A stretch of 64,000 nucleotides of DNA from IMGVR_UViG_3300023184_000027:143953-207952, one strand, 5' to 3'; counted from the stretch's first letter, positions 6,615-57,488 are shown. Program-made: numbers and translations. Notes: a model not told the origin generated them from the sequence alone.

Positions 6615-7049
6615 TTATTTTGTTATAAAAATTTTATTTTTTAAATTAATCATTTCCACTTCATTGGCGTGAAATATAGGTTCTTCGGTGTCTTTCATAA
6701 CATAAGAATTATACTTGTATGGGTTGTAGGTGACAATATTATTGTTAGGTTCTTCTGGTAAATTCTCACAAGGGAATATACAATAGTCCATTAAAGTTCC
6801 GATAACAAATGAATGTACGTTTTTTCTTTTTTCTTTTAAAACTTTTTCTCTACCACCGGGTCTAACTCTAAACTCAACATCTTTTAATTTAACATAATCG
6901 GCATGAAATATAACTAAACTTTTGTATATAATAGAAAATGTTTGTTTATGTAGGTTATAATAAAGCATAACTTTTTTACCGATATAATCGTTATCTGAAT
7001 AATTTTCAAATAATCTTTTTGATTGAGATTCTGTTATTAATATTTTCAT
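6615..7049 (-). CDS. Conserved phage hypothetical protein with MKILITE leader
   Basis: Body YYNLHK..FSI...GREKVLKEKRKNVHSFVIG...VTYNPYK resembles a widespread phage family of unknown function. Confidence 0.7.
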   Translation of the reverse strand: MKILITESQSKRLFENYSDNDYIGKKVMLYYNLHKQTFSIIYKSLVIFHADYVKLKDVEFRVRPGGREKVLKEKRKNVHSFVIGTLMDYCIFPCENLPEEPNNNIVTYNPYKYNSYVMKDTEEPIFHANEVEMINLKNKIFITK

Positions 7050-7453
7050 TATTCGTAATATGCTGATACCGATTTAACCGGTAAATTAAATTTATCTTCA
7101 ACCCATTTTTTCATAGGTTCTCTCCAACTACTTCCAAACATATTGTCTAAATGTTCACCATATTCACCCCATACCTCTACAATTGGTGCCCTGTCTTTAT
7201 GTGGTTTACTTGATGGTTCATCACTATAGTAATCAACATTAAGATAATTAAATACAATATCAGAATAATCTTCACCAGCCCAAGTACCACCTTTATAAAA
7301 ATGTAAAAGGTTTTCATCTTCAGGATTTTCCTGCCAATCGTCACCGTCGTAATTTGAACCATAGACCCAATCAATTTCATTTGAGTCTAAATAACCATCA
7401 ATATACTTATATATTGAATCAAATAATTTACTTTCTGTTATTAATATTTTCAT
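7049..7453 (-). CDS. Acidic hypothetical protein with MKILITE leader (paralog of 7453-7842)
   Basis: Shares YYSD..S.K, NMFG..W.EPMK.W..D.F.LPVK with its neighbour. Confidence 0.75.
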   Translation of the reverse strand: MKILITESKLFDSIYKYIDGYLDSNEIDWVYGSNYDGDDWQENPEDENLLHFYKGGTWAGEDYSDIVFNYLNVDYYSDEPSSKPHKDRAPIVEVWGEYGEHLDNMFGSSWREPMKKWVEDKFNLPVKSVSAYYE

Positions 7454-7842
7454 TAGTCGGCTACGATTGTTTTTACTGGTAAATCAAAGTTATCTTTAAA
7501 CCACTCTTTCATAGGTTCTACCCAATAATTTCCAAACATATTGGTTAATTTTTCATAATCAGTAACAATTAATATTGGTGTCTTTTCTCTAAAAGATTTA
7601 TTTGAATGTTTATCACTATAATATTCCTTTTGAATATATGCAAAAGCAACACCATCTTGGTCGTAATCACCTTCATATATATGATAAAAATACTCTCGTA
7701 TATATGGGTTTTCCTCATCATCATATTCATCATCATTCCATGTGGTTGGATGAAAATAATCTATGTTACTTACATCAAAAGTATCTTCAAGATAATTATA
7801 TATTGTTCTATATAATTTATTTTCTGTTATTAATATTTTCAT
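7453..7842 (-). CDS. Acidic hypothetical protein with MKILITE leader
   Basis: Paralog of 7049-7453; TAATG coupling on both sides. Confidence 0.75.
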   Translation of the reverse strand: MKILITENKLYRTIYNYLEDTFDVSNIDYFHPTTWNDDEYDDEENPYIREYFYHIYEGDYDQDGVAFAYIQKEYYSDKHSNKSFREKTPILIVTDYEKLTNMFGNYWVEPMKEWFKDNFDLPVKTIVAD

Positions 7843-8726: not shown

Positions 8727-10502
8727 TTGGAAAACAATACATCTGAAAATTCTAATTTAACAGTAGAACAACGAGCAATATCCCTTCTTGAAACTTATCA
8801 GGGAGCGAATAACTATATCCTAAAATTAAAATTACAAAAGGAAACTAATAAGAGATTCTTCCCTACTCGGGCACAATCTGACTACATAATAAATTATCAC
8901 GAAGTAATACCAAAGGTGGCTAAAAGATGGGTTGATTTAGACCCCTACTTCGCCAAAAAAATTGCTGATGAAAAACTATTAACAAATATTCCCGAACAAG
9001 TATGGGTGGAAAAGTTATTAGTTGAGAAAGAAAAATCGTATCATATTTGGGGTAAAGTTTTATCCGGTGAAACTATTAACGAATTTTGGTTACCGAAGGG
9101 TGCCTTAATTAAAACTCACACAATTAAAGATGTTGTGGTTGATTATGAAAAATATTCTAATAGACCACCACTTGAACATCAAAAACTTGCAATTGAGAAA
9201 CTTGCCGGGTCTAAAAGATTTATTTTAGCCGACGATATGGGACTTGGTAAGACAACTTCCACCATTATCGCCGCATTAGAAACGGGAGCGAAGAAAATAT
9301 TAATTGTTTGTCCGGCATCCCTAAAGATTAACTGGCAAAGAGAGATTGAGAATTATACCGATAGAAGTGTTTATATTTCTGAAGGTAAGAATTTCTCAAT
9401 AGAACACGATTTTGTGATTGTAAATTACGATATTCTTAAAAACTTTTACGACCTTAAAGGTAAGACAGAATCTTTAATCACTCAAGGAAATTTTGATTTA
9501 ATTATTTTGGACGAAGCTCATTATGTGAGTAATGGACAAGCTGCGAGAACCAAACTTGTTAATAGTTTTTCTAAAAATTGTGAAAGAGTGTGGTTGTTAA
9601 CGGGGACACCTATGACAAATCGTCCGATGAATTACTTTAACCTATTATCTCTTATTGAGAGTCCGGTTTCCCAAAATTGGATGGCTTACGCAATACGATA
9701 TTGTCAAGGTTATCAATTTATGGCGGGAAAAAGAAAAATATGGAATGTTTCGGGAGCATCAAATTTAGAAGAATTAAGAGACAGAACATCAAGACAAGTA
9801 TTGAGAAGATTAAAAACTGAAGTTTTAGATTTACCTGAAAAAATTATTACCCCAATTTATTTAAGATTAAAATCAAAACTTTATGAAGGGTTGATGGGAG
9901 AATACTATGATTGGTATAATAAAAACCCCGATGAATCAACATCACTTACCGTTCAGTTCAGTAAGTTAATGAAAGTTCGTCAAGTGATTGCTGAAGAAAA
10001 AGTTAAAGACACAATAGAATTAGCTGAAAATATTTTGGAACAAGATAAAAAAGTTATTATTTTTACCAATTTTACGGACACATTAAATCAGATTGCCGAA
10101 CATTTTGGAAAAATTGCGGTTAAATTAGATGGTTCAACATCAAAACCTCAACGACAATACGCTGTTGACCAATTTCAAGATAATGAAAAGATTAAAGTGT
10201 TTGTTGGTAATGTGAAGGCAGCCGGAGTTGGTATAACTTTAACCGCCGCTGAAGCTGTAATCATCAATGACTTATCTTTTGTTCCTGGTGACTTAGCACA
10301 AGCTGAAGATAGAGCATATAGATATGGACAAAAAAATTCGGTATCAGTTTATTACCCAATATTCGATAATAGTATAGAAGGAATCATTTATGATATGGTG
10401 AATCATAAGAAACAAAATATTAATACCGTAATGGGTGATAATATAGAAGAGAAGGGTGATTTCATCGGAGAACTTATGAATAAAATTAACAACCGAGGTT
10501 AA
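8727..10502 (+). CDS. SNF2/SWI2-family helicase (HARP/SMARCAL1-like)
   Basis: ILADDMGLGKT, IVCPASL, LDEAH, LTGTP, GVGITLT, QAEDRAYRYGQ. Confidence 0.93.
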   Translation: MENNTSENSNLTVEQRAISLLETYQGANNYILKLKLQKETNKRFFPTRAQSDYIINYHEVIPKVAKRWVDLDPYFAKKIADEKLLTNIPEQVWVEKLLVEKEKSYHIWGKVLSGETINEFWLPKGALIKTHTIKDVVVDYEKYSNRPPLEHQKLAIEKLAGSKRFILADDMGLGKTTSTIIAALETGAKKILIVCPASLKINWQREIENYTDRSVYISEGKNFSIEHDFVIVNYDILKNFYDLKGKTESLITQGNFDLIILDEAHYVSNGQAARTKLVNSFSKNCERVWLLTGTPMTNRPMNYFNLLSLIESPVSQNWMAYAIRYCQGYQFMAGKRKIWNVSGASNLEELRDRTSRQVLRRLKTEVLDLPEKIITPIYLRLKSKLYEGLMGEYYDWYNKNPDESTSLTVQFSKLMKVRQVIAEEKVKDTIELAENILEQDKKVIIFTNFTDTLNQIAEHFGKIAVKLDGSTSKPQRQYAVDQFQDNEKIKVFVGNVKAAGVGITLTAAEAVIINDLSFVPGDLAQAEDRAYRYGQKNSVSVYYPIFDNSIEGIIYDMVNHKKQNINTVMGDNIEEKGDFIGELMNKINNRG

Positions 10503-10514
10503 TTCGGTTGTTAA
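10486..10514 (+). terminator. Hairpin at helicase 3' end
   Basis: 11-bp stem TTAACAACCGA / TCGGTTGTTAA, 7-nt loop; immediately followed by the GATATTTATA motif (10515-10524). Confidence 0.55.
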
Positions 10515-10543
10515 GATATTTATATGAATAACAAATAAGTCAA

Positions 10544-12082
10544 ATGAAAAAGATTGAAGAAAAAATCAATCTCATAACAGAAGAACTAAAAAAAGTTGAA
10601 ACCCTCGAAAATCAACAAATGTTCATTAATGAGATGAAAAAAATAGGGATAGAGAAATTACCCTACGCCTATTCAGCACTAAAACAATTTATTGATGCTG
10701 AAACAATGAATTACCATTATAATAAACACTATAAAGGATATGTTGATAAATTAAATTCAGCCCTTAAAAAGAAAGATTATGGTGATTTAGAATTAGAAGA
10801 AATTATTAAATCAATAAGTAGATTTGATAAGACAATTAGGAACAATGCCGGAGGAGCTTTTAACCACGCATTGTTTTGGAAAATGTTAACCCCAAAAAAA
10901 CAAACACCAAATGGTGAAATTATTAGGCAAATTAAAAAAGATTTTACTACCTTTGTCAAGTTTAAAAATAAGTTTGAGGAAATTGCTCAAGAAAAATTTG
11001 GTTCAGGTTGGGTTTGGTTAGTTTTAACAAAACGAAATACCTTAAAAATTGTAACCACAGAAAATCAAGACAACCCTCTTATGAATGTTATAGACGACGG
11101 AGGTTATCCAATATTAGGATTAGATTTATGGGAACACGCATATTATTTAAAATATAGAAATAAAAAAAATGACTATATTAAGAATTTTTGGAAATGTGTT
11201 AATTGGGAATTTGTTAATAAACTATATACAATGAGAATTGAGACTAAACTAAATGAATCATTAAATTTTAAATCTGTAATTTCTGAAGGTAAATCAGAAA
11301 GATGTAGTAGAGAAGAAAACGAGGCCATTCGTATGGTTTTTAATATCAACCCGAAAATTAAACAAATTTTTATGGAAGGTATTAATCACATCCTTAAAGA
11401 AGTTTTTCCGGATAACTATTATGGATATGGTGAATACGCTAAAGGTGAAATGTCGGGAGTGTATGATTTAGAAAGAGATGGTCGTTCTGTCTTAAATAAA
11501 TTAAACACAAACTATAGTTGTTTCTGTGTTCTTCTTAATGATACAAATCAAGTTTTAAGTTCTAAAAATTTACCAAACATTAAATTAATTGGTTTAAAAC
11601 CATTGGAACAAATTGAAGAAACTAAAAAATTACTTATTTTCTTACACGAATATAAATTTAGAATATTCACACAAACTTCAGCAACATTTCAAAACATTAT
11701 GAAAGTTTTAACCCAAACAGATACTTGGGGACAAGCTCGTGAAGACAAAACTGTTGAGATTTTAAAGAAAAAATTTGGAAAAGATAATGTTAACGCCATC
11801 GGTAAATTAGGTAGTAAAGCTGATATGATTGGTGGTATAGATTGTGAAGTTATTATTAATGGTAGAAAATTAAGTAGTCAAATTAAACCATTTGGAAGTA
11901 TTGAAACTACCGGTGAAGAAATTACCGTTATTGGTTCAGGTGCCGTTAAAAAATACTATACAGATTGGTTAATTTTCACTAGAAATAATAAAGATGTTTT
12001 AATTTTCAGAAATAAAAATTCAAAAATTGTTAATGGACAATATGTTTTTCCTAAAGGAGATTTAATTTATTCATTAAATTGA
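10544..12082 (+). CDS. sod: Fe/Mn superoxide dismutase fused to a C-terminal PD-(D/E)xK-like domain
   Basis: LPYAYSAL, HYNKHYKGYV, NAGGAFNHALFW, FGSGWVWL, NQDNP, DLWEHAYYLKY; C-term E..x..DMIGGIDC...QIKPF. Confidence 0.85.
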   Translation: MKKIEEKINLITEELKKVETLENQQMFINEMKKIGIEKLPYAYSALKQFIDAETMNYHYNKHYKGYVDKLNSALKKKDYGDLELEEIIKSISRFDKTIRNNAGGAFNHALFWKMLTPKKQTPNGEIIRQIKKDFTTFVKFKNKFEEIAQEKFGSGWVWLVLTKRNTLKIVTTENQDNPLMNVIDDGGYPILGLDLWEHAYYLKYRNKKNDYIKNFWKCVNWEFVNKLYTMRIETKLNESLNFKSVISEGKSERCSREENEAIRMVFNINPKIKQIFMEGINHILKEVFPDNYYGYGEYAKGEMSGVYDLERDGRSVLNKLNTNYSCFCVLLNDTNQVLSSKNLPNIKLIGLKPLEQIEETKKLLIFLHEYKFRIFTQTSATFQNIMKVLTQTDTWGQAREDKTVEILKKKFGKDNVNAIGKLGSKADMIGGIDCEVIINGRKLSSQIKPFGSIETTGEEITVIGSGAVKKYYTDWLIFTRNNKDVLIFRNKNSKIVNGQYVFPKGDLIYSLN

Positions 12083-12103
12083 TATTTATAAATAAAAAGA
12101 ACT

Positions 12104-13216
12104 ATGTCAATAATCCCAGAACCTCAAAGAACCGCATTATACACAAGAATTAAACATTTACTTGGAGCACCACTTCGTTCGATAGAAATTGAAGACGAAA
12201 TGATGGATAGTTTATTAGAATTATCTATCGGTGATTATTCTCAATATGTCCAAGATTGGTTAATCGAGTCTCAATGGACATCCTTATATAATCTTAATCT
12301 TGATACTCAATCATTATCAAAAGCTTTTATAACAAAAAGTTTAGATTTTGAAACGAGATACACCTATGCGTATTCTAAAATTGTTGGATTACAGGCTGGT
12401 GGTGATTGGGAACTTAAAAAAGATTATATACAACTTCAACGGAATCAACAAATATATGAAATTCCTGCAAATAGAGAAATTAATGAAGTTTTATGGTTTA
12501 CACCCGCAGAACTTAATAATTTATTATTTGACCCTTGGACTTTTGGAGCTTTAGGTGCCGGTGGTTTAGGAGGACCTGGTGGTTTTTCACAAATGGGCAT
12601 GACAGGTTCATTTTTTATGATGCCAGCGTTTGATATGTTATTGAGAATGCAAGAAATTAATATTCAAAGAAGAATAATTGCTGGTGAATTAACGTATAGA
12701 ATTACCGCACTTCCTGAAGGTAAAAAAGCGTTACACTTAATGAATACTCCAGGTGGTAAATTTGATTTCGGTAATTCAACATTAACAAGAGGTAAAGTAT
12801 GGTATTGGTACTACGATGTTGGTCCGGCAGATAGAGATAAATGTTTAAAAGCAAATCCGGATATTATTACACTTCCTTCTGATGTTCCATTTGAAGAAAT
12901 TTCTTGGGTTGATTTAAATAATCCCGCTCAACAATGGGTTAGAAGATGGTTTACCGCATATGTAAAACAAACATTGGCGAGAGTTAGAGGTAAATTTAGT
13001 GGAAATGTTAAAACACCCGATAGTGAATTAACAATGGATTACGCATCATTAGCAACAGAAGGTGCCGACGAAAAATCAAAACTTGAAGAGGAATTAAAAT
13101 TAAGATTGGAAAGATTACGACCTGATAAAATGATGGAAAGGGAAGCTTTATTGGCCGAGAATTTAAATAAATCTTTGAAATTTAGAGCAATGCCAAGACA
13201 AATTTATGTAATTTAA
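12104..13216 (+). CDS. Neck / head-tail adaptor protein (T4 gp13-like)
   Basis: IKHLLGAPLRSIEI N-term; WVRRWFTAYVKQTLARVRGKF...G..EKSKLEEEL C-term; GATATTTATA at 12081-12090. Confidence 0.75.
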   Translation: MSIIPEPQRTALYTRIKHLLGAPLRSIEIEDEMMDSLLELSIGDYSQYVQDWLIESQWTSLYNLNLDTQSLSKAFITKSLDFETRYTYAYSKIVGLQAGGDWELKKDYIQLQRNQQIYEIPANREINEVLWFTPAELNNLLFDPWTFGALGAGGLGGPGGFSQMGMTGSFFMMPAFDMLLRMQEINIQRRIIAGELTYRITALPEGKKALHLMNTPGGKFDFGNSTLTRGKVWYWYYDVGPADRDKCLKANPDIITLPSDVPFEEISWVDLNNPAQQWVRRWFTAYVKQTLARVRGKFSGNVKTPDSELTMDYASLATEGADEKSKLEEELKLRLERLRPDKMMEREALLAENLNKSLKFRAMPRQIYVI

Positions 13217-13581: not shown

Positions 13582-13585
13582 ATAA

Positions 13586-13611
13586 AAAAGGTGTCGAATA
13601 CGACACCTTTT
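13586..13611. terminator. Bidirectional intrinsic terminator
   Basis: AAAAGGTGTCG-AATA-CGACACCTTTT between convergent genes. Confidence 0.9.
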
Positions 13612-13617
13612 CTGTTT

Positions 13618-16499: not shown

Positions 16500-19400
16500 T
16501 TAAAATGACCCAATATCACCAACAATATTCCACTCACATATGTTTGTCAAAATATATCGTGCATTACTTGCGGATACTGATGTGTATAAAAACCCGGGTA
16601 CATCTAATCTAACACCAATTGCGACGTTATTGGTTAATCGTAATTGCGACCATTTAATTAACAAATTATTATAATTTGTTGAGCTCATCGGTGTAGTGTT
16701 GGTAAACATATATATCATTGATTGAACTTTACTAATATTCCAGTTGGATATGTCTTGACTAAAACTTGTATTGTAAGAAAACATTGACGACATATTATTC
16801 ACATTACTTACATTCCAAGAGTTAAGGGGTTGATTGAATGATGAAGTGTTAAACATTGAGCTCATACTGGTAACATTACTTACATCCCAATTATTGATTG
16901 ATTGATTGAATAAATTATTTTCCGTAAACATTCCAGTCATATTAGTGACTTTACTAACATCCCAATTACCGATTGGTTGGTTAAAAGATGACCTTCTAAA
17001 CATATATGACATATCAGTAACATTACTCACATTCCAATTACCGATTGGTTGATTGAATGGTGTGCCATGGAACATATACGACATATCGGTAACACCACTC
17101 ACATTCCAAGATGAAATATTTTGGTTAAATGATGAATTATAGAACATTTGAGACATAGACACAACATTACTAACATCCCAATTATTAATGTTTGGTTGAT
17201 TAAAAGATGTGTTATAACTAAACATACCACCCATATATCGGATACCACTAATATTCCAAGACGATATATCTTGATTGAATTGTGTACCATCAAACATAGA
17301 TGATAAACTAGTAATATATCTTAAATCCCAAGAAGTAATATTATTAATTGTTCTTATACTATGACATTTATAAAATAATCCAGAAATTGTTATATAACCA
17401 TAATTTTCCTCTTCATCATAATCGGTAAGGTTTAAAACCCCAATAACAGAATCTAACGTTAAATTAACACAATAGCTAAATTGTGCGTATGTTCCCCCTC
17501 TTAAAGAGAAATTTCCCCAATTTAATATAGAATATATTTTATAGTTATTTGGGTAAATACCACTATCCTCATAATCCAAAGCTTCGTCAGAATTAAATTC
17601 CCATCCACGCACTAAACCAGTTACCTTAATAATATAATAACCTATCGACGAGTAAGTGTGGGCTCTATTTGCATAACTATTCACAGAAGTTGTTCCATCA
17701 CCCCAATCTATCGTACCACCATAATTTCCATCAACAATATATGGGAGAGTTATTGTATCGTTTATAACTAATGTTCTCCACCTTGATGTAAAGTCATTTC
17801 CATACGGATTTGGTGTTCTTGTTGGTGTCCGAGTCATTGTAGGGGTTTGAGTTATTGTAGGTGTTGGACTCATTGTTATTGTAGGTGTTGGTGTTGGTGT
17901 AGGGGCAACAACTAATGTTGTTAAACCATTTTGATATAAATAAACATCTGAAAATACAGAACTTCCATCAACATATCTTTGAAATATTTTTACATATATA
18001 AAACTTACGTAAGTTGAGTAGGTTTGGAACGTAGTCGTTGTTGTACAAGTCATATTATTAGTGTTGGCCCATGTAACATTATCAAACGAATAATATATTG
18101 ACATAAATTGACAAGGTAATGTATTACCAATTACCATATAGACCTGATATACTGTTGTACTTCTTTGAATGATACTAGATATGGTTGGTACTAATTGAGG
18201 TCCACTCACTATTGGTGTTGTAGTTGGTGTTGGTGTAATTGTTGGTGTTGTGGTTTTTGTTGGTGTTGGTGTCGGAGTTACCGAGGGAAACGTGTATAGA
18301 ACAACATTTGAATAATCACTATTAGTACTATTACTTGAACAATATTGGATAAGTCTAACATATACATCTCCGGTTGTTTTAAACGAATTAAAACTAATTG
18401 GGGAAGAGCAATTTGTCTCCCCATAAGTTACACTAGCGTATCCCCAACTAATGTTATCGTAAGAATATTGTACTATCACACTATTACAGGAAACTGGAGG
18501 AGTAAAATCAACTAATAATGTGCTGGATGAGAGATTACTAACACTTATAATTGTTGGTGGAAGACACGATGTTTCCGATATCGGAGTAATTACCACCCCT
18601 CCCGAATATAGAGATATGTCAGAATAAATCACTGTTTGACTACCAACATAAGTTTGACCAATTTTAATATAGACAATCCCTGTATAACTAAATGAGCCAA
18701 AGGGAAATAATGAACCACAATTATATACTCCGTAATAAGACCAATCAACATTATTAAAAGAATAATATAGTATTATATTTAGACAAGCACTGGTATTCCC
18801 TGGTGTTACAAATATATTATATGTTGAACCACCTGTTCTAACAATGTTAGTTATTACAGGAAGATTTTGAGCTCCTAATCCCGGGGTTGGCGTTGGTGTA
18901 GGTGTTGGTGTGGGTGTTGGTGTGGGTAGAGAGGTTGTGAAAGCGTCATTTGTATATAACGCAATATTTGAATAACTCTCAACACCATAAATTGATATTT
19001 GTTTAATTTTCACATATATAGTACCTGAACTATCCAAAGAGGTACTTAGACCAACGGGTGAACTACAACTATTTGATGTACCACTAAACCATGTTATATT
19101 ATCTAACGAACCATACGATAAAACACTATTACAAGGGTAATTATTTGCTGTTGTAAAATAAATTAAATAATAATTTATGGATACTCTTTGTACATTATAG
19201 ATTATTGGTGTCTCATAAATTATACCACTTGTTTGTGTTGGTGTTTGTGTTGGTGTTTTAGTGTTTGTCGGTGTTGGAGTTGAAGTTTTAGTGTTTGTTG
19301 GTGTTTGTGTAGGTGTTTTAGTCGGAGTTCTTGTTGGTGTTGATGTTAATGTTGGTGTCGGGGTTAGAGTTGGTGTTTTTGTTAAAGTTTTAGTTGGTGT

Positions 19401-22400
19401 TGGTGTTTTAGTTGGGGTTTTAGTTGGGGTTGGAGTTTTAGTTGGGGTTGGAGATAATCCTGGTGTTGGTGTTAGTGTTGGTGTTGGAGTTGGATTTAAA
19501 CCTTTTGTTGGTGTTGGTGTTTGTGTTGGTGTTTTAGTTGGTGTTGGTGTTTGTGTTGGTGTTTTAGTTGGCGTTTTAGTTGGCGTTGGAGTTTTAGTGT
19601 TTGTAGGTGTTGGTGTTGGTGTAACTGATATAGCATCGCCGGTTATTATCCAACCAAAAGTATTTATAAGCACACCTCGTGGATTGTCCTCTATTATGGT
19701 ATATGTTAATCCGACAGCACCTAACGGAACATTATATTTTTTTATTGGTAACACCGACCATTTTAATAATAAATTATCATAATTTGTTAAGCTCATAGTA
19801 CTTCCGTTAAACATGTTCTCCATGTTAACGACTGATTTAATATCCCAATTTGATATATCTTGATTAAATAGTGTTGAATAGAACATACCTCCCATATGAG
19901 TCACATTACTAACATTCCAATTACCAATTGGTTGGTCAAATTGACAATCGTAGAACATACCACGCATTGTAGTTACCCCACTAACATTCCAATTTTCAAG
20001 ACTTTCATTATATTTTGAATTACGAAACATATAACTCATGTTAACAACACTATTGACATTCCAATCACCTATTGGTTGATTAAACGATGAGACGTAAAAC
20101 ATATAAGACATATCTTTAACGTTACTAACATTCCAGGAGTTAAGAGATTGATTAAATAATGATGTGTTAAACATATGTGACATATTGGTAACACCGCTAA
20201 CATTCCAACTAGAGATATCTTGATTAAATTTTGAAGACGCGAACATATATATCATATTACGAACATTACCAACGTTCCAATTTGAAATATTTTCATCAAA
20301 AATTGTTGCGTTAAACATATAACTCATATTAATAACTTTTGATGTGTCCCAATTATTTAAATCTTGATTAAATGGTGTTGAATAAAACATGTATGTCATA
20401 TTGGTAACATTACTAACATTCCAATTACCTATTGGTTGATTAAACGATGCGTTATAAAACATAAATGACATATCGGTAACATGACTAACAACCCAATTTG
20501 ATATATCTTCATTAAATATTGACCCTCTAAACATCCCTAACATAGTCGTAACACTACTAACATCCCAATTTGATATACCCTGATTAAACACAGACTCTCT
20601 AAACATACTTGTCATAGTCGTAACACTACTGACAACCCAATTACCGATTGGTTGATTAAATGATGAAGAGTAAAACATAGATGACATATCTTTAACATTA
20701 TTAACATTCCAATCACCGATTGGTTGGTTAAATCTTGATAAAGTAAACATATTTGACATATCAATAACGTTACTAACATCCCACATAGAAATATCTTGGT
20801 CAAATAACGATGAAGTAAACATACTTCTCATATCTGTTACATTACTAACATCCCAAGTCGATATGTCTTGGTTAAATAATGAATCATAAAACATGGTTGC
20901 CATATTGGTAACACTACTAACGACCCAATTACCGATTGGTTGATTAAATATTGATTTATAAAACATGTTTGACATATCGGTAACATTACTAACATCCCAA
21001 TTTGATATATCTTGATTAAACGATGTGTTATAAAACATTCCTGTCATATTTGTTATATTACTAACATCCCACAATTCTATATTATTAATTAAGGTTAAAT
21101 TGGTACAATTAAAGAATAACCGGTATAAACTAGTTGTGCCTGTTAATGTTAATGCGTCGTTAACATTGTCTAAAACTAAATTAGTACACCCATAAAAACA
21201 AGAAGTACTATTCCCTAAATTTAAACAACCCCAATTAACTATTGATAAGAGCTTAGTTTTGTCAATATTATTCCCAAAAGACCACTTTACTACCACACCA
21301 GTTATTGTAATTGTATAATCACCACCATCAGCATAAATGTGTTTTCTGTTTGCATAACTATTCACAGAAGTCGTTCCATCCCCCCAATCTATCGTACCAC
21401 TATATGTTCCTCCGACTACATAAGGTAATGTAACACTATTAAATGACGATTTTAACCTCCATGTTGATATAAAATCTAGATTATGTGATATTACTATTGG
21501 GGTGGGTGTAGGTGTTGGTGTTAGAGTTTCTGTTGGTGTATTAGTTGGGGTTGAAGTGTTAGTTGGGGTTAAAGTCAAGGATAATCCTGATGTTGGTGTA
21601 GGTGTAGGTGATAATCCTGGCGTTGGAGTTGGAGTTGATGTCTCTGTAGGAGTTGGAGTGGGTGTCTCTGTAGGAGTGACTTCAGGAGTGACTAATGTAT
21701 AGTCAATATATACAACCTCACCAAAAGTGAAATTGGTGTTTGTTTGATTTACTAATGTAATCCCCGCTTCCGAAACAGTGTCTATAAAATAACCACTTTC
21801 GTCGCTAAGTATCTGAACTGAATCTGACCCACCACTAAACACCGCAACAGATTCATTCTGACCAATTGTAAGTAAAAAATTATTACCAACCATATTACCA
21901 AAATAATCGGTTTGATTAACACCATTATTATCAATGTTATTAAAATATATTCCACCATTCTCTGATATATTATTAGGGTTATTATCTGCAATATGTAAAC
22001 TATAATTAGCCAATAATGTTTCACCTGATAATGGAATATCAATATTACTTATTAAAGAATACGGAATACCATCATTTATTGATGATATATCGAGAGAATT
22101 AATTAATAATATGGATTCGGAAAATTTATACTGTGTGTTCTCAATAAAATAACCATCAATTGTTATATCACCTACAATACAATCGATGGATGTTATTGGT
22201 AAATTTATAACTCCAGGTCCATAAACAAACCAACCAACCTTTATATCACATAAATTAGTGTTAGAAAATTTACCTATGTTTCCTGTTGGGTTTTGATTGG
22301 TATATGGCCCTAAAAATGATTGAGTTGGGGTTGCAGTTGGAGTTGGAGTTGGAGTATTCGTAGGTGTTTGGGTTGGTGTTTGGTCCGGTGTTTGGTTTGG

Positions 22401-22643
22401 AGTTACTCGTATTCTTTCATATTTTATATCTGAAGGTGGCCAACTAATACTCGTTAACACTCTTATACGACCTAAACTATTATTACTAGAAGAAAAAGTC
22501 CCATTAATGCACCAAATATTTTTTATTTGGTTTGGCATTAACTCCACCTGTCTTTTCCAAACAGAATCAGACAAATTTTGAAAAGTTATAGTTATTTTTT
22601 CATCACCATCATTTATTACCACTAGTCTTTGACCTATTGACAT
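16500..22643 (-). CDS. Giant surface/virion protein: two PKD-like + DUF285 (BspA-like) repeat blocks, four Fn3-like repeats, Pro/Thr stalks
   Basis: TIDWGDGT x2; many [20 protein letters not shown] repeats; long TPTPTKTP runs; no signal peptide. Confidence 0.85.
19230..19625 (-). repeat. Longest Pro/Thr (mucin-like) low-complexity tract
   Basis: About 130 codons of [10 protein letters not shown]; shorter tracts near 17810-17905, 18215-18285, 18880-18930, 21500-21690, 22320-22410. Confidence 0.9.
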
Positions 22644-22667: not shown

Positions 22668-23771
22668 TTATGTTGGTATCTCAACGGCAAAACAAATTTC
22701 ACCATGTTCTCTTATTAATCTTTCCATATCAGCAAATGAAATATAGGAGTGTCCTGATTGACCCCAAGATTTTCCCCAACTATTTTTAATTCTGAAAAGT
22801 CTCGTCACCGTATTAACACCATTAATAACATAAGCGTGTCCTCCAGCAATACGACCACTAATTCTAATTAAACCATTTCTATCTGGATAAAACATCCCAT
22901 TATACCAATTAGTTCCAACAACAACAGGACCTAAATTTAAAACAGAATTTATTAAACTTGTTAAATCAAAACCCCAATAATAGGAAGAAACTTTACGAAC
23001 ACTTTGTAAATATTTAACACCACCTCTAACTGATGTACCATCATAATTCTCACCAACCCATTCGTCAACTCTTTGAGCGTTTTCATAAATAACCCTAGGC
23101 GGTATTATCGGAGCAACCCCACTTTGAGGAACCGGACCATCTTCTAACCAATGAGCCCAAGCATATCCAACACATTGGGGTGTATTACCTTGGTTACCCC
23201 ACCATCCATTATCATCCCAGTATCTATTGGTAATTCTAACAGGTACGGCACTTAAAAGATTATTTATAGAATATTTATGGTCTCTTTCATCAGGTATATA
23301 TTGTCTACCTAATTGATATGTTTTATTAATACTTTCTATAAGAACAATTGGTTCGTTAACACAACAAGGAAATTCTGAAACATAACAACTATCATACACC
23401 AAATCATCGGCAATGAATGATTCCTGAACATTAATATTAAGTTTTTCTCTAATTGGTAAGATAAGTACACCATCAGAATTTCTTAACATAAACTCACCTT
23501 CATACCTACCAACACGATTGGTGTCTTTGGATGTGAATTGGTAATATATGTAATATTCTGGTTCGGCATTGGGGTCTATTGAGGTTTTCTCAACAAATCC
23601 ACCCGGTCTTGAAGTAATTTTTGGTATTCCCGTTTCTACATCTACCATTGAAAAGAAAATTGACGATAACTCTATGGTTTTCATAAAATTATTGTAATCA
23701 CTTCTTCCATCTTTTACGACTTGGAATTTTAAAACAGGTAAAGTCGAGTTTTTCTTAATAAAAAAATCCAT
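22668..23771 (-). CDS. BppU-like baseplate/fibre-attachment domain fused to papain-like (C1) cysteine peptidase
   Basis: N-term FFIKKNSTLP...YQFTSKDTNRVGRYEGEF; C-term NQGNTPQCVGYA, GGHAYVING, IKNSWGKSWG. Confidence 0.8.
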   Translation of the reverse strand: MDFFIKKNSTLPVLKFQVVKDGRSDYNNFMKTIELSSIFFSMVDVETGIPKITSRPGGFVEKTSIDPNAEPEYYIYYQFTSKDTNRVGRYEGEFMLRNSDGVLILPIREKLNINVQESFIADDLVYDSCYVSEFPCCVNEPIVLIESINKTYQLGRQYIPDERDHKYSINNLLSAVPVRITNRYWDDNGWWGNQGNTPQCVGYAWAHWLEDGPVPQSGVAPIIPPRVIYENAQRVDEWVGENYDGTSVRGGVKYLQSVRKVSSYYWGFDLTSLINSVLNLGPVVVGTNWYNGMFYPDRNGLIRISGRIAGGHAYVINGVNTVTRLFRIKNSWGKSWGQSGHSYISFADMERLIREHGEICFAVEIPT

Positions 23772-23817: not shown

Positions 23818-25494
23818 TTAACTCTCTTTTCTTAATGAACCATCGTAATGTTCAAATCGGTCGTGTTCTGTTGGTGTTAACAATAATAATCCCGGATTGA
23901 TTTTTCCTTTGACGGTTTCTTGATAACTATATGACATAAGGGTCTGTTCAAATGGATGCGCCCACTTTGTTTCTAAATAACATTTGTAATTGCCCTCTCT
24001 TGATAACACAATTGGCCAATTTGAAAGGTAGACTTCTCCTGTAACATATGGTAACCCTTTGTGAATATGAATTTCTTTAAATTTTGTTTTTGGCGAATTG
24101 GGGTCTAAACCTTGAACAGGTAATTTAGGGTTGTTTGGCCAATGTTTTTGTCTAAAATCTTGGGGTACATTATACCAACTCCATTGTACACTATTATCAC
24201 CAAAAAACTCACTAAAATTAAGTTTAAGAAAATCAAAATTTTCTTTAGCAAGTATATCTAATGATTTTTGATATAAGTTATCAACAAAACGGGGGAATCC
24301 ATTTCTACAAACTTCACCTTTTTTAGGGTAAAACGCCATATCATCTTCAAACCACCAATAACAATCTAAATCAGTTTCGTCAAAATGTTCAGCAACAAAT
24401 ACTCTACCACCAACAATACCAATATTATCTTTTTTAATATGTTCAAAACCATATTGCTCACATAGTTCAATATATCTCGGTGTTGTGGATAAATCTGTTG
24501 AGTTGTCTAATAAAAATTTCTTTGGTTTCTCCACAAAATCTTTATCGTAGTCCAACATAGATTGGATAAGAACTTCTAATTGTTTTGGTGAATTAAATGT
24601 AATGACATAAAGACCAACTTTTGATGTGTCTAAATTATTCACAATAACATCTTTAGATACTTCCGATTTAACCTCAACCGTCATATCTTTTAAATCTTCA
24701 AAAAACTTACCCATTAACCCATTACCATCTATTTCTGAATAAGTAATTAAGTTTGGGTACTTATATGTCATAATAGTAAATAATGATTCTTCAGTACCCA
24801 TTAAACCATTTGAAAGGGTTTCATTCATTAATCCGTAATAAATGTTATTAATTTCGGATATAACATCTTTTTTTCCACCAAAGAAACCTGCTCGAGCAAC
24901 CATATTAACAGGTTTACCTGCTAAATCACATAACTCTTGATACTTGAATCCGTGAATTTCACTATTAGTTTCATAAGGAAAACAAACAAAGTGGAAATTC
25001 TTAACTAATTTAGGTAATTTATCTAAAACTTTGTCATGAGTAAAGTATCCAGGGTGGATTGTATTGGTTAATCCGGCATCAATCCAAAACATATATTCCG
25101 AATCAAACTTATCTAATATTTTCGCATCATGTAAAAGATAAACTTTTGACATAACCAAAGGGTTATACATTTCTAATTTGGCTTGTGTTGAATCAGTTAA
25201 CCAACCGACCTGATTATACCAATCAGGGTTTGTTCTTATCTTTTTAATTTTATCGTAAAATTCGTTATTTTTAAACCAAGATAAATCTCTACGAACAAAT
25301 TGAGTGTTTTCACTTCGTCGATTATTTAATACAAAATTCTCTAATTCTTCATCTCCAAAAATTATCATATTAACATCAACTTGTAATAATTGTTGAAACT
25401 TATCTAAATAATGTTGGAATGAACGGGACCACCCTTCTTGAAGGTCTCCTCTACCTATGTCCCATAATCCTGTAACTAATGTTATTTTACTCAT
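23818..25494 (-). CDS. HtrL/YibB-like glycosyltransferase fused to a GT-A domain
   Basis: ITLVTGLWDIGR, FWIDAG, GFFGGKK, GTEE; second domain LYVITFNSP...LLDNS...FEDD. Confidence 0.7.
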   Translation of the reverse strand: MSKITLVTGLWDIGRGDLQEGWSRSFQHYLDKFQQLLQVDVNMIIFGDEELENFVLNNRRSENTQFVRRDLSWFKNNEFYDKIKKIRTNPDWYNQVGWLTDSTQAKLEMYNPLVMSKVYLLHDAKILDKFDSEYMFWIDAGLTNTIHPGYFTHDKVLDKLPKLVKNFHFVCFPYETNSEIHGFKYQELCDLAGKPVNMVARAGFFGGKKDVISEINNIYYGLMNETLSNGLMGTEESLFTIMTYKYPNLITYSEIDGNGLMGKFFEDLKDMTVEVKSEVSKDVIVNNLDTSKVGLYVITFNSPKQLEVLIQSMLDYDKDFVEKPKKFLLDNSTDLSTTPRYIELCEQYGFEHIKKDNIGIVGGRVFVAEHFDETDLDCYWWFEDDMAFYPKKGEVCRNGFPRFVDNLYQKSLDILAKENFDFLKLNFSEFFGDNSVQWSWYNVPQDFRQKHWPNNPKLPVQGLDPNSPKTKFKEIHIHKGLPYVTGEVYLSNWPIVLSREGNYKCYLETKWAHPFEQTLMSYSYQETVKGKINPGLLLLTPTEHDRFEHYDGSLRKES

Positions 25495-25495
25495 A

Positions 25496-26254
25496 TTATC
25501 TTTCTAAATATTGTAATTTATAAAACTTATCGGCGTTATCAGATGCACTTTCTGAGCGGTACCACCAACAACCACCTCTTTCATTTGGTAAATGTCCGAT
25601 AATTGGAAATGATTCTACTCTTGGGGAGAAATCGGTATCTTTATCATAACTAACTACCCATTTTTCAATATTGTGTTTACCCATATATGCTGATAAAATT
25701 ATATCGTCACTCCAAGATTCACCAACAAATTCAGTAAAAAAATCGGATTTAAAAAAACTTCTCTTATATGATGCTGTTTTGTAACCCTCAATAATCTTAA
25801 CTCTAACATCTTGTGTAACTGTTGTACAAAAATGACAAGTACCATTCAAAGCCGACATACCAGCAAACCCAATTACAGCATTTGGGTATTGTTTTCTTTT
25901 TTCTAAATGATATTCTATAAAACCATCTTCGTAAGATAAATCATCATCAACAATAATAATAATAATATCTTCATTTTCGTCTGTTCGTAAAATTGTTGGT
26001 AAAATTTTAGTCATAGACCCATAATCATCAGTTCTAAATATTTTTAATTTTGAATCGGTAATTTCCGACAACCAAGAAGGTATTGAATACTCTTCGTTTG
26101 TTTTTTTAACAATATATGGTATGTTAAGATGAATTTCATAATTAGTATATGAAAGGGTTAATAATCTATTTATAACTGGTTGTAAACCCCCATTTGGGTC
26201 GTGGTAATTTAGTCTTGAAGGAATAGTTGTTAAACTAATAATTATTTTTTCCAT
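25496..26254 (-). CDS. GT-A fold glycosyltransferase
   Basis: IIISLTTIPSRL, DYGSMTKILP, IVDDD, SDDIILS. Confidence 0.75.
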   Translation of the reverse strand: MEKIIISLTTIPSRLNYHDPNGGLQPVINRLLTLSYTNYEIHLNIPYIVKKTNEEYSIPSWLSEITDSKLKIFRTDDYGSMTKILPTILRTDENEDIIIIIVDDDLSYEDGFIEYHLEKRKQYPNAVIGFAGMSALNGTCHFCTTVTQDVRVKIIEGYKTASYKRSFFKSDFFTEFVGESWSDDIILSAYMGKHNIEKWVVSYDKDTDFSPRVESFPIIGHLPNERGGCWWYRSESASDNADKFYKLQYLER

Positions 26255-26263
26255 TATTGTAAT

Positions 26264-26959
26264 TTATTTATTTTTATTAATATCGTATTTTAAAAACAAA
26301 GTTTGTCTCCCATTAAATAATGGGATATACCCTTCTTCTAATAAAACAGGAGATAGTAAAGCATCTTTACCACCATCATTTGTTATGTAATCAGTATCAT
26401 CAATTAAAATTAAATTTGTGTCTGATAGTTTATCTTTTGATGCGTAATACGCCTCTAAATGTTTTTCAGCATACATTGGAGTACCTTTATCCCAACCATC
26501 TAAAAATAAGACATCAATTTTAGATGGAAATTCTTTTAAAAATTCTATACCGTCTTTTGGTATTACAATATTTAAATTATTAGGTACCTCTCGACCTAAA
26601 TTAGAATAAGACCATTTAACACCATTAATACAATTTATATCAATATCTACGGTATGTACATCAAACCCTGCTTCTACCCAAAAAAAACCTCCGTGACCAT
26701 CACAACAACAAGGGGGTGATAAATAAGAATTGTTTTCACTATTATAATAATCAACACATCCTTGTGTAACAGATAATCTTGTTGACCCAATTTCAACAAC
26801 GGTTTTCATTTGCAAATAGTTAGCGATTTCTATAGCTTTTTTTAAATAATATGCGGGTTTAGAACGTTTAAAATCATAATCTTCTCCGGTTAAATTATCG
26901 TATGTCCAAAATTTCTTATCAATTTTGAAATTATGAACCATTTCATATATTTTTTTCAT
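26264..26959 (-). CDS. Class I SAM-dependent methyltransferase-like
   Basis: VVEIGS, HTVDID, DGIEFL, IDVLFLDG, ILIDD. Confidence 0.7.
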   Translation of the reverse strand: MKKIYEMVHNFKIDKKFWTYDNLTGEDYDFKRSKPAYYLKKAIEIANYLQMKTVVEIGSTRLSVTQGCVDYYNSENNSYLSPPCCCDGHGGFFWVEAGFDVHTVDIDINCINGVKWSYSNLGREVPNNLNIVIPKDGIEFLKEFPSKIDVLFLDGWDKGTPMYAEKHLEAYYASKDKLSDTNLILIDDTDYITNDGGKDALLSPVLLEEGYIPLFNGRQTLFLKYDINKNK

Positions 26960-26964
26960 TTTTT

Positions 26965-27648
26965 TTACATTATAGGGTTTAGATATGAATCTCCATTTAT
27001 TGTTAAATCAACGGAATGATATCCACATTTTTCCGAAAAATCATTAACTATTTTTTGAGCATCATCTAAAGTTAAATCATTATGAAAATTATTTTCAAAT
27101 AAAATAAATGGTTTGATATTATTTTTAATCAAATATCCCATCATATCTTTTATAATTGGTAAATCTCTATTTTCAGTATCTATTTTAATAAATGTAATTT
27201 CATTTGGTAAAATAGTATTTATTTTTTCTAAAAAATAATCCATTTTATAAAATTTAGTTTCACCATAAGATTTTGAAACTTTAGATAACCCTAAGTTAAT
27301 ACTATCATCTAAATCTTTATTTGACCAATAATCAATTCCCGAATCGTCAAAAAGAAAATCCCCCTCAACATCTGACAACCCAAAATTATGTACGGTCACC
27401 TCAAGATTATTTTTAAATTTTTCAACCATATATTCACTAAGTCTTTTAGATGCCTCAACAATTATACATTTATCTACTTTATATTTTTTAGACACTTCAT
27501 CATAAAATTTACCAACATTCCCCCCAATATCAATAAATGAAACATTCTTAATATCTTTAGAATCAAGATAATCAAATAACCATTTTAATTCTATTCCTAT
27601 GTGTCTTAAAACAATTGTTTCATCCCAATATTTTATTGCATTATTCAT
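26965..27648 (-). CDS. FkbM-family methyltransferase
   Basis: FIDIGGNVG, VEAS, HNFGLSD, FIKIDTE. Confidence 0.8.
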   Translation of the reverse strand: MNNAIKYWDETIVLRHIGIELKWLFDYLDSKDIKNVSFIDIGGNVGKFYDEVSKKYKVDKCIIVEASKRLSEYMVEKFKNNLEVTVHNFGLSDVEGDFLFDDSGIDYWSNKDLDDSINLGLSKVSKSYGETKFYKMDYFLEKINTILPNEITFIKIDTENRDLPIIKDMMGYLIKNNIKPFILFENNFHNDLTLDDAQKIVNDFSEKCGYHSVDLTINGDSYLNPIM

Positions 27649-27667
27649 TATATTTTAATTTATTTTT

Positions 27668-29331: not shown

Positions 29332-29335
29332 TTTT

Positions 29336-45806: not shown

Positions 45807-45815
45807 TTAATTATG
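45083..45815 (+). repeat. Direct repeat copy 1 (~730 bp)
   Basis: Colinear with 48474-49205 up to and including the next ATG. Confidence 0.95.
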
Positions 45816-46718: not shown

Positions 46719-46722
46719 TATT

Positions 46723-49748: not shown

Positions 49749-49756
49749 ATAATTAT

Positions 49757-55102: not shown

Positions 55103-55105
55103 AAA

Positions 55106-55975: not shown

Positions 55976-55976
55976 A

Positions 55977-56849: not shown

Positions 56850-57028
56850 TATTCAGCCCAAGTTGGTTTAGGTGGATTAGAGTCCACAACATATCCCTCA
56901 ATAGGAAAATCGGGAGATATAAGAGTATTTCCGTTTAAATCAGTTAACCTAACTAAATTCCCATTACTTATTTCTTGATACGCTTGAAAATCCCATCCAA
57001 GAGTATATTGTATTAAAATATATTCCAT
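56849..57028 (-). CDS. Small 59-aa protein missed by the ORF track (possible fibre assembly factor)
   Basis: MEYILIQYTLGWDFQAYQEISNGNLVRLTDLNGNTLISPDFPIEGYVVDSNPPKPTWAE; TAATG coupling at both ends. Confidence 0.75.
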   Translation of the reverse strand: MEYILIQYTLGWDFQAYQEISNGNLVRLTDLNGNTLISPDFPIEGYVVDSNPPKPTWAE

Positions 57029-57444: not shown

Positions 57445-57488
57445 TTTGTATTGTTTTTATTTTAAATTTAGTGTTATTTTTATAATTG

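What the first reader, a model, noticed from the sequence alone, without database searches (positions are those of the whole stretch)
10544..12082. Superoxide dismutase fused to a nuclease-like domain, with (I/L)xE sites bracketing the SOD
Seen: an intact Fe/Mn SOD (all metal-ligand motifs), then ~270 aa ending in E...DMIGGID...QIK, a PD-(D/E)xK-type signature with a QxK variant. The 30-aa N-extension contains LITE and FINE, the interdomain linker contains KLNE and VISE, and a GATATTTATA motif precedes the gene. Inference: a late, capsid-packaged polyprotein cut by the prohead protease into an SOD (protecting packaged DNA or countering ROS at infection) and a DNA-binding or nuclease module.
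Basis: partly seen in the sequence, partly recalled or inferred. Interest (0 to 1): 0.65.

Follow-up and report, generated by a model that had tools for sequence, protein, structure and literature searches.

The report
Phage superoxide dismutase inserted into a nuclease-like protein
A large freshwater phage carries an intact manganese-type superoxide dismutase spliced in-frame between the short leader and the body of a conserved, restriction-nuclease-like phage protein; the layout suggests, but does not prove, that the enzyme is loaded into the virus head and cut free there.

Summary
Window 10544..12082 (+) is a real 512-aa gene. It has a 30-aa leader helix, a complete Mn-type Fe/Mn SOD (ligands H58, H108, D194, H198), a disordered 20-aa linker, a helical domain, and a C-terminal domain with a PD-(D/E)xK nuclease fold. 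That last domain carries E400, D427, D433 and Q446-x-K448, which are near-invariant across 103 diverse relatives.

New here: the leader and the C-terminal 260 aa form a widespread phage family ('X', 303 clusters at 50% identity). The SOD is an accessory insertion between X's leader and body. It is present in 55 of the 80 nearest loci and cleanly lost in two lineages, whose complete genomes have no SOD at all.

The polyprotein idea is plausible but unproven. Complete close relatives encode a T4 gp21-type prohead protease and a gp23-like capsid protein with INE|A at the T4 cleavage-equivalent position. Four of the five conserved non-catalytic (I/L)xE sites lie in the leader and linker. The upstream ATATTTATA motif is a real promoter-like element shared with the protease, scaffold, sheath and neck genes.

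No virion or cleavage data exist. I rate packaging plus processing at about 0.45. Overall this is a new variant of known kinds.

The parts
10486..10514 (+). 12-bp-stem hairpin overlapping the stop codon of the upstream SNF2 helicase gene; terminator-like boundary between the helicase and the SOD gene
   Evidence: terminator-like scan; sequence
10515..10524 (+). GATATTTATA promoter-like motif, 20 nt upstream of the ATG
   Evidence: genome-wide upstream, orientation-specific enrichment; shared with morphogenesis genes
10544..12082 (+). Whole gene: 512 aa, leader - SOD - linker - helical domain - nuclease-like domain
10544..10633 (+). Leader, aa 1-30: a lone amphipathic helix carrying conserved ITE (11-13) and INE (28-30). 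It is also present in SOD-less members of the family.
10634..11233 (+). Mn-type Fe/Mn superoxide dismutase, aa 31-230. M31 looks like the SOD's own ancestral start. Ligands are H58, H108, D194, H198; Q175 is of the Mn type.
11234..11293 (+). Linker, aa 231-250: predicted disordered (pLDDT 30-43), with conserved LNE (236-238) and ISE (246-248)
11294..11719 (+). Helical domain of family X, aa 251-392, with the conserved GRSxxNKLNTNY loop; no known fold match
11720..12079 (+). PD-(D/E)xK nuclease-fold domain, aa 393-512. E400 lies in helix 1, D427 follows strand 1, D433 starts strand 2, and Q446-x-K448 lies in strand 3.
12081..12090 (+). Second copy of GATATTTATA, 13 nt before the downstream T4 gp13-like neck-protein gene (12104..13216)

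Best explanation
Shown: the gene encodes a modular protein of a freshwater jumbo myovirus. A conserved phage protein family ('X') has an N-terminal leader helix, a helical domain and a PD-(D/E)xK nuclease-fold domain. In this gene, X has an intact Mn-type superoxide dismutase inserted in-frame exactly between the leader and the body. The SOD is accessory: present in most close relatives, deleted in two lineages. X is the constant part.

Inferred: the gene is transcribed late from its own ATATTTATA-type promoter, together with head, neck and tail genes. The leader directs the precursor into the assembling prohead core. The T4 gp21-type prohead protease then cuts after Glu at the conserved (I/L)xE sites. 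Cuts after E13 and/or E30 remove the leader. Cuts after E238 and/or E248 separate the domains. This leaves a free SOD and a free nuclease-like protein inside the capsid, to be ejected with the DNA. On this reading the SOD has no targeting signal of its own and hitch-hikes on X's leader, which would explain why it sits precisely behind the leader and is never a separate gene.

The SOD would dismutate superoxide at the start of infection or in the particle. The X body would bind or cut DNA using E400/D433/Q446/K448 and a divalent metal.
For: Architecture:
- Pfam finds both SOD domains, and all ligand motifs align to solved SODs.
- The AlphaFold model of aa 232-512 has pLDDT 83.9 and pTM 0.78.
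- Its aa 393-512 match Hjc (Z 7.7), NhoI (7.5), I-Ssp6803I (6.8), HhaI, DpnI and PvuII. Foldseek's top hits are I-Ssp6803I, Hjc and SPARDA. An ESM Atlas PDDEXK_5 cluster matches at TM 0.62.
- In 103 diverse relatives, E400 is kept in 98, D427 in 102, D433 in 102, Q446 in 101 and K448 in all 103.

Insertion and loss of the SOD:
- SOD-less members keep the leader.
- Of the 80 nearest IMG/VR loci with complete ORFs, 55 are fusions. Nine are a 309-aa form that retains the SOD's first residues, and 16 are a 294-aa form.
- Complete genomes carrying the SOD-less forms have no SOD anywhere.

Protease and capsid:
- Complete relatives, one with a 97%-identical SOD-X, encode Peptidase_S77 (E 8e-25; 35% identical to T4 gp21). 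It sits in a T4-ordered module of portal, protease, acidic scaffold-like protein and gp23-like capsid protein.
- The capsid protein has ...SFLINE|A... aligned to T4's ...SFLTE|A....

Sites:
- Four of the five conserved non-catalytic (I/L)xE positions lie in the leader and linker.
- An (I/L)xE lies 6 residues before the conserved Cys in four separate X lineages.
- The leader is a lone low-confidence helix and the linker is disordered, so both are accessible.

Timing: the promoter-like motif is shared with the protease, scaffold, sheath and neck genes and is absent before NrdAB, DnaB, UvsX, SbcC and the SNF2 helicase.

Precedents:
- T4 Alt is cut at ITE-6 and LTE-619, and T4-type and giant-phage prohead proteases cut after Glu (PMC5694885).
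- The T4 capsid-targeting sequence carries foreign proteins, including a nuclease, into heads (PMC3012670).
- The PBCV-1 Cu/Zn SOD is late and packaged in virions (PMC7019647).
Against: - There is no proteomic, transcript-timing or biochemical evidence for this protein or any relative.
- The total (I/L)xE count is what the K/E/I/L-rich composition predicts. Helical, charged leaders and linkers generate such tripeptides easily.
- The head module and protease were found in 91%-identical complete relatives, not in this record, which is only 71% complete.
- The promoter-like motif also precedes a DNA methyltransferase gene and lies distally before PolB, so 'late' is not established.
- The neighbours include an SNF2 helicase and PolB, which also fits a cytoplasmic DNA-metabolism role.
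- Packaging an active nuclease next to the genome needs some explanation, such as metal dependence or DNA modification.
- Fold-search scores are middling (Z below 8), and the acidic residue of (D/E)xK is replaced by Gln, so catalysis is not assured.
Confidence: 0.45

Rival explanations
1. It is an unprocessed, cytoplasmic, bifunctional late enzyme. The X nuclease works on DNA during replication, recombination or packaging, for example as a debranching, Hjc-like resolvase feeding the packaging motor. The SOD is a tolerated domain insertion at a flexible joint that protects the infected, aerobic cell and the phage's oxygen-dependent enzymes. The leader is an oligomerisation helix.
For: - The best structural match is a Holliday-junction resolvase.
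- The gene lies between an SNF2 helicase and a neck gene, near PolB.
- The phage encodes class Ia NrdAB, DnaB, UvsX and SbcC.
- The SOD part is much better conserved than X (300-334 bits in all fusion representatives, against 130-277 for X), as expected for a working enzyme.
- Flexible linkers are the usual place for domain insertions.
- The (I/L)xE count is not above chance.
Against: - It does not explain why the SOD always sits exactly behind the leader and is never a separate gene in 80 loci.
- It does not explain why the few conserved (I/L)xE sites cluster at both SOD borders.
- It does not explain why the gene shares its upstream motif with head and tail genes rather than with replication genes.
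- Distant X members are not next to neck or helicase genes.
Confidence: 0.3
2. One mRNA gives several proteins by internal initiation. M31 (MKKIGIEKLPY..., a perfect SOD N-terminus) and M231 are retained start codons of the formerly separate SOD and X genes. Free SOD-X or X would then be made without any protease.
For: - M31 is nearly invariant and M231 is common in the fusions.
- Gene callers start truncated copies at M231.
- T4 gene 21 itself has an annotated internal start.
Against: - M231 is replaced by K, S, G or L in several fusions.
- Internal starts cannot release the SOD from X, because there is no stop codon between them.
- No ribosome-binding evidence could be obtained.
- The SOD-less 294-aa forms show that X normally starts with the leader.
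Confidence: 0.07
3. The C-terminal domain is a non-catalytic DNA-binding or structural (neck- or head-associated) module that only keeps the nuclease fold.
For: - Gln replaces the second acidic residue of the motif.
- There is no sequence-level match to any curated nuclease family.
- The gene is adjacent to the gp13-like neck gene in this clade.
Against: - Near-total conservation of E400, D427, D433, Q446, K448 and Y471 across 103 divergent members is the pattern of an active site.
- QxK variants of the motif occur in active enzymes such as HinP1I (from memory; that chain is in the hit list at Z 4.1).
- The adjacency to the neck gene is not kept in distant clades.
Confidence: 0.12

Closest known systems
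Bacterial Mn superoxide dismutase (SodA type; solved examples 3tjt, 1y67)
   Same: Both Pfam domains are present. All four metal ligands, the gateway His/Tyr, the Mn-type Gln in NQD and the GG pair are kept. Identity is about 45-48% to bacterial SODs, and the nearest cellular ones found are mostly Flavobacterium.
   Different: Here it is an internal domain of a 512-aa phage protein, preceded by a 30-aa leader and followed by 280 aa. It scores below the NCBIfam equivalog cut-offs (197 bits against 363).
Minimal PD-(D/E)xK nucleases: archaeal Hjc resolvase, homing endonuclease I-Ssp6803I (Pfam PDDEXK_5), R.PvuII
   Same: Same core fold and order of elements. The Glu sits on the first helix, the Asp at the start of strand 2 and x-K on strand 3, with D-x12-QxK spacing. 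These three known enzymes are each other's nearest structural neighbours (PMC3384342), and all three are in the top hits here.
   Different: There is no detectable sequence similarity. Gln stands in place of the second acid. The domain has an extra conserved Asp (D427) and Tyr (Y471), and it is fused to a 140-aa helical domain of unknown fold.
T4 internal proteins and Alt: capsid-targeted, cut by prohead protease gp21 after (L/I)xE
   Same: A short N-terminal leader with (I/L)xE (Alt is cut at ITE-6). The lineage has a gp21-type protease, a T4-ordered head module, and a capsid protein with INE at the T4 cleavage-equivalent site (PMC5694885, PMC3012670).
   Different: No sequence similarity to the T4 proteins. 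Neither packaging nor cleavage has been shown. A two-cargo polyprotein has not been described for T4, as far as my searches went.
Chlorovirus PBCV-1 Cu/Zn SOD (A245R)
   Same: A virus-encoded SOD, expressed late, packaged in the virion, and thought to lower superoxide early in infection (PMC7019647).
   Different: An unrelated SOD family (Cu/Zn), a eukaryotic virus, a stand-alone protein, and no protease processing.
Stand-alone SodB-like genes of jumbo phages (e.g. the Pseudomonas phage PA5oct group)
   Same: Fe/Mn SOD genes in large phage genomes.
   Different: Only about 27% identical and about 196 aa, without the leader or the nuclease-like half. No homologue of the C-terminal half exists in the 50,697 deposited phage records.

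Membership tests
Fe/Mn superoxide dismutase (PF00081 + PF02777) | Both domains score above Pfam gathering thresholds | tested here: met
   83.4 bits (cut-off 27) and 133.8 bits (cut-off 20.9)
Fe/Mn superoxide dismutase (PF00081 + PF02777) | Four metal ligands (His, His, Asp, His) and second-sphere Tyr/Gln | tested here: met
   H58, H108, D194 and H198 align to solved SODs, along with Y66 and Q175. All are invariant in 25 fusions.
Fe/Mn superoxide dismutase (PF00081 + PF02777) | Superoxide dismutation activity and metal specificity | not testable with these tools
   The Mn type is inferred from the NQD Gln and the GG pair, and from a higher SodA than SodB score.
PD-(D/E)xK nuclease superfamily | alpha-beta-beta-beta-alpha-beta core fold | tested here: met
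   The model region 162-281 has pLDDT about 85-96. Most of the top 20 VIA hits are PD-(D/E)xK enzymes or tRNA-splicing endonucleases (Z 5.1-7.7). Foldseek probability is 0.99 to 2ost. Scores are middling.
PD-(D/E)xK nuclease superfamily | Catalytic constellation: Glu on helix 1, Asp at strand 2, (D/E)xK on strand 3 | tested here: inconclusive
   E400, D433 and K448 are in the right elements and near-invariant, but the (D/E) is Gln446 in 101 of 103 members.
PD-(D/E)xK nuclease superfamily | Sequence-profile match to a curated family of the clan | tested here: not met
   No Pfam, NCBIfam or PHROG hit for the query. Among 46 members there are only single sub-threshold hits to Mrr_cat_2, RE_EcoO109I and Card1_endonuc.
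PD-(D/E)xK nuclease superfamily | Metal-dependent nucleic-acid cleavage | not testable with these tools
Archaeal Hjc resolvase / PDDEXK_5 (I-Ssp6803I) families | Family-level sequence homology | tested here: not met
   Structural similarity only; no profile or PDB sequence match.
T4-type capsid-targeted, prohead-protease-processed proteins | The phage encodes a gp21-type (S77) prohead protease and a T4-like head module | tested here: met
   Met in three complete relatives, including one with a 97%-identical SOD-X. Not found in this 71%-complete record.
T4-type capsid-targeted, prohead-protease-processed proteins | N-terminal leader and accessible (L/I)xE cleavage motifs | tested here: met
   Conserved sites at positions 11, 28, 236 and 246, in a low-confidence helix and a disordered linker. 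The raw motif count is not above chance.
T4-type capsid-targeted, prohead-protease-processed proteins | Late expression | tested here: inconclusive
   The gene shares the ATATTTATA upstream motif with the protease, scaffold, sheath and neck genes. RNA-library contigs cover the gene but cannot show timing or even transcription.
T4-type capsid-targeted, prohead-protease-processed proteins | Presence in virions with processed termini | not testable with these tools
   No proteomic data are available.

The most novel reading that the evidence does not exclude
A natural cargo-loading device. The SOD has been captured behind the capsid-targeting leader of an ejected nuclease-like protein, flanked by prohead-protease sites. 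One precursor would then deliver two separate enzymes into the head. If so, the proteome-wide N-terminal tag MK(I/L)(I/L)ITE, carried by about 7% of this lineage's proteins, would mark a large set of protease-processed head cargo proteins in a T4-like jumbo phage of freshwater Flavobacteriia.
Probability: 0.35. Interest if true: 0.8.

Novelty: new variant of a known kind. Interest (0 to 1): 0.6.

Why it matters
Phage-borne SODs are usually filed as simple auxiliary metabolic genes. Here the enzyme is built into a conserved, uncharacterised nuclease-fold family at a position, and with flanking motifs, that make a concrete prediction: two enzymes released from one precursor inside the capsid.

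If that is true, it would be a natural counterpart of the engineered T4 capsid-targeting system. It would also be the first SOD shown to be delivered by a bacteriophage particle, and a handle on what jumbo phages of abundant lake bacteria inject with their DNA.

Even if it is not true, the work defines a new phage nuclease-like family of 303 clusters with a D...QxK signature. It also shows a clear case of gain and repeated clean loss of an accessory domain.

Tried and rejected
- Sequence searches for the C-terminal half found nothing usable: Pfam, NCBIfam and PHROGs, a PDB profile search, tblastn against deposited phages, and the ESM Atlas feature search of the helical domain.
- Stand-alone 283-aa relatives looked at first like separate X genes. 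They all sit at contig starts and are truncated gene calls beginning at M231, so I discarded them as evidence. The tree's count of gains and losses (quick tree only) is inflated by them. I rely instead on the 80 complete ORFs.
- I rejected treating the raw count of (I/L)xE as evidence.
- Searches for the S77 protease, Gp23 and the T4 portal in the window's own record were negative. Two PHROG scans of 20 of its large ORFs found no head genes. The record is incomplete, so this says nothing. Loci from the look-up of encoding contigs could not be used as genome handles.
- Conserved adjacency to the neck gene as a functional clue failed, because distant members lack it.
- The leader profile against all N-termini of a complete relative gave only a weak next-best hit, to the scaffold-like protein (E 0.075). 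This is not significant.
- Read laying (4.6 kb, within the operators' limit) used assembled contigs only. It cannot show transcription, starts or levels.
- Literature searches found no description of this fusion.

Full report
WHAT IS THERE

The ORF at 10544..12082 (+) encodes 512 aa. The window is the last 64 kb of a 207,952-bp IMG/VR virus record that is estimated 71% complete. The record is about 30% G+C. It carries a tail sheath gene, a family-B DNA polymerase, an SNF2 helicase, class Ia ribonucleotide reductase, DnaB, UvsX, SbcC and a sigma factor.

Near-identical sequence occurs in lake and freshwater metagenomes from 19 studies. The nearest cellular SODs found, at 43-48% identity, are mostly from Flavobacterium and other Flavobacteriales. 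Together with Fib_succ_major domains in neighbouring genes, this points by inference to a Bacteroidota host.

THE SOD

Pfam finds both Fe/Mn SOD domains well above threshold, at aa 36-115 and 122-226. The best solved relatives are bacterial Mn/Fe SODs (E 1e-57), and every ligand motif aligns. The ligands are H58, H108, D194 and H198. Y66, Q175 in NQD and the G103-G104 pair indicate the Mn type, and the SodA model scores above the SodB model. These residues are invariant in 25 fusion proteins. Across divergent fusions the SOD part keeps 300-334 bits while the C-terminal part drops to 130 bits. The SOD is therefore under the stronger constraint.

THE C-TERMINAL HALF

No curated family matches it, and no deposited phage genome encodes it. 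It is nevertheless a large family. The word search returned 296 hits. An exhaustive profile search found 303 clusters at 50% identity, 61 of them below E 1e-30.

An AlphaFold model of aa 232-512 is confident (pLDDT 83.9, pTM 0.78). It shows a helical domain (aa 251-392) and an alpha/beta domain (aa 393-512). The latter matches Hjc (Z 7.7), NhoI (7.5), I-Ssp6803I (6.8), HhaI (6.8), DpnI, PvuII and tRNA-splicing endonucleases. Foldseek ranks I-Ssp6803I, Hjc and the SPARDA nuclease first. In the ESM Atlas it matches PDDEXK_5 clusters. I-Ssp6803I, Hjc and PvuII are known to be one another's closest structural neighbours (PMC3384342).

The Z scores are middling, but the residues agree with the fold assignment. 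In 103 divergent members, G396, E400, D427, G431, D433, Q446, K448 and Y471 are kept in 98-103. They fall on the expected elements: E400 on the first helix, D433 at the start of strand 2, and Q446-x-K448 on strand 3. Whether the Gln variant is catalytic cannot be decided here.

THE NEW POINT: THE SOD IS AN INSERTION INTO THIS FAMILY

SOD-less members begin with the same leader helix (MKxxExKxxLIxEE...) and run straight into the ...SE(G/S)K(S/A)E(K/R)C... start of the body.

The 80 nearest IMG/VR loci all have complete ORFs. Fifty-five are 510-512-aa fusions. Nine are a 309-aa form that still carries the SOD's first residues (...INEMKKIEIEKL) joined to ...KSIISEGK, which is a clean deletion of the SOD. 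Sixteen are a 294-aa form with the leader only. Complete genomes carrying the 309-aa and 294-aa forms have no Fe/Mn SOD anywhere.

M31 begins a sequence that reads like an ordinary SOD N-terminus. The apparent 283-aa stand-alone relatives are truncated gene calls at contig starts.

In the tree (quick version), fusions are confined to one clade of the family and absent from the three outer clades. Synteny in this clade runs sheath ... SNF2 helicase > [SOD-]X > T4 gp13-like neck protein > small ORF, with PolB convergent. Distant members lie elsewhere.

TESTING THE POLYPROTEIN IDEA

The raw (I/L)xE count is not above chance. Conserved sites give a different picture. Among 25 fusions down to 43% identity, only six such positions are kept in at least 60% of sequences. 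One is the SOD's buried DLWEH. Four of the other five (positions 11, 28, 236, 246) lie in the leader and linker, which are otherwise the least conserved parts.

In the full-length model the leader is a lone helix of low confidence and aa 234-250 are disordered. The sites would therefore be accessible.

The own record lacks a head module. Three complete relatives, however, all encode a Peptidase_S77 protease (E about 1e-24). One of them has a 97%-identical SOD-X and aligns to 136 kb of this genome at 91% identity. Its protease is 35% identical to T4 gp21. It sits in a T4-ordered module: terminase ... portal, two small proteins, protease, an acidic 484-aa scaffold-like protein, and a gp23-like capsid protein.

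That capsid protein has ...SFLINE|A... aligned to T4's ...SFLTE|A.... This is where gp21 cuts gp23 (the cut position is from my own knowledge; the T4 record notes only that gp21 cleaves gp23). The same INE precedes M31 in SOD-X. T4-type and giant-phage prohead proteases all cut after Glu, and T4 Alt is cut at ITE-6 and LTE-619 (PMC5694885).

THE UPSTREAM MOTIF

ATATTTAT[AC] occurs 53 times in the genome. Twenty-eight of these lie within 60 nt upstream of an ORF in the same orientation, and only three in the opposite orientation. It ranks first among all 56 permutations of its letters. It precedes SOD-X, the neck gene, the sheath gene and the first gene of the tail operon, and in the complete relative also the prohead protease and the scaffold-capsid pair. 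It is absent before NrdA, NrdB, DnaB, UvsX, SbcC, the sigma factor and the SNF2 helicase. It also precedes a methyltransferase gene and lies distally before PolB.

A hairpin separates the helicase from the motif. I read the motif as a late-promoter candidate, perhaps read with the phage's own sigma factor. That reading is inference.

A metatranscriptomic library holds contigs of relatives across the gene. This cannot prove transcription.

A RELATED ODDITY

In this genome, 13 of the 16 occurrences of [ILV]ITE lie in the first 20 or so residues of ORFs, against 1.0 expected. In the complete relative the figure is 24 of 32, against 2.4 expected. Most read MK(I/L)(I/L)ITE, often in proteins that share nothing else. 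Thr codons vary freely, but the Ile before it is mostly ATA. SOD-X's LITE at 10-13 is one of these occurrences. This could be a protease or targeting tag like Alt's ITE-6, a shared first strand, or a translation-start effect. I could not decide between these.

VERDICT

The architecture is secure: leader, then inserted Mn-SOD, then linker, then helical domain, then PD-(D/E)xK-fold domain. Packaging and processing by a T4-type protease is the most economical reading of the position of the insertion, the conserved flanking sites, the promoter class and the head module. Precedents exist in T4 capsid-targeted cargo (PMC3012670) and in the virion-packaged PBCV-1 SOD (PMC7019647). It still rests on inference, and I put it at about 0.45. 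An unprocessed cytoplasmic bifunctional enzyme stands at about 0.3.

I found no paper describing this fusion. Databases label it simply as superoxide dismutase.

Noticed in passing
window 6615..7049 (-), 7049..7453 (-), 7453..7842 (-); genome-wide in G000 and in relative G001: Proteome-wide N-terminal signature MK(I/L)(I/L)ITE. In this genome, 13 of 16 [ILV]ITE occurrences lie in the first 20 or so residues of ORFs (1.0 expected). In a complete relative the figure is 24 of 32. Many of the proteins share nothing else. It could be a processing or targeting tag (T4 Alt is cut at ITE-6), a common first strand, or a translation-start effect.
   Followed up: partly
window 505-514 (-), 10515-10524 (+), 12081-12090 (+), 39173-39182 (-); about 53 sites in the genome: ATATTTAT[AC] is an orientation-specific upstream element found before about 28-35 genes. 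It is enriched before morphogenesis genes and absent before replication genes, which makes it a late-promoter candidate. The phage also encodes a sigma factor (L012:17434-18231, - strand).
   Followed up: partly
L005:5293-5982 (+): In the lineage with the 294-aa SOD-less form, a 230-aa HNH-type endonuclease gene (it ends ...HIDHIIP...NLQPLW...N) is inserted between the SNF2 helicase and the X gene. This is a mobile element at the same intergenic spot.
   Followed up: no
window 54161..63998 (-): The jump in G+C to about 41% at the end of the window is explained by a collagen-repeat ORF of at least 2126 aa (eight Collagen stretches) and three paralogous glycine-rich proteins. These are presumably fibres.
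   Followed up: partly
window 16500..22643 (-): A 2047-aa protein made of DUF285 repeats (744 bits), lying directly beside PolB.
   Followed up: no
window 23818..30583 (-), 42043..51901 (+), 30684..34214 (-), 38737..40779 (-): A dense set of glycosyltransferase genes (GlcNAc transferase, GT1, GT9, HtrL_YibB) together with two proteins carrying Fib_succ_major domains. This suggests glycan modification of the virion, the host surface or DNA.
   Followed up: no
window 22668..23771 (-): A papain-family (Peptidase_C1) cysteine protease gene with the ATATTTATA-type motif upstream.
   Followed up: no
window 13584-13613: A 13-bp-stem bidirectional terminator-like hairpin between the convergent 119-aa ORF and the PolB gene.
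   Followed up: no
L014:6001-9330 (+): A 1109-aa protein from another phage contig carries the X module at its C-terminus (aa 851-1102), behind 850 aa with no known domain. It lies next to a Peptidase_M16 gene and a peptidoglycan-binding gene.
   Followed up: no
G001:243519-244268 (-) and G001:240171-241625 (-), in the complete relative: The 249-aa protein between the portal and the protease has the second-highest (I/L)xE density in that genome (12 sites, many of them LNE, LSE or ISE). The 484-aa acidic protein before the capsid gene looks like a scaffold. Both are as expected for T4-style core proteins that are degraded by the protease.
   Followed up: partly
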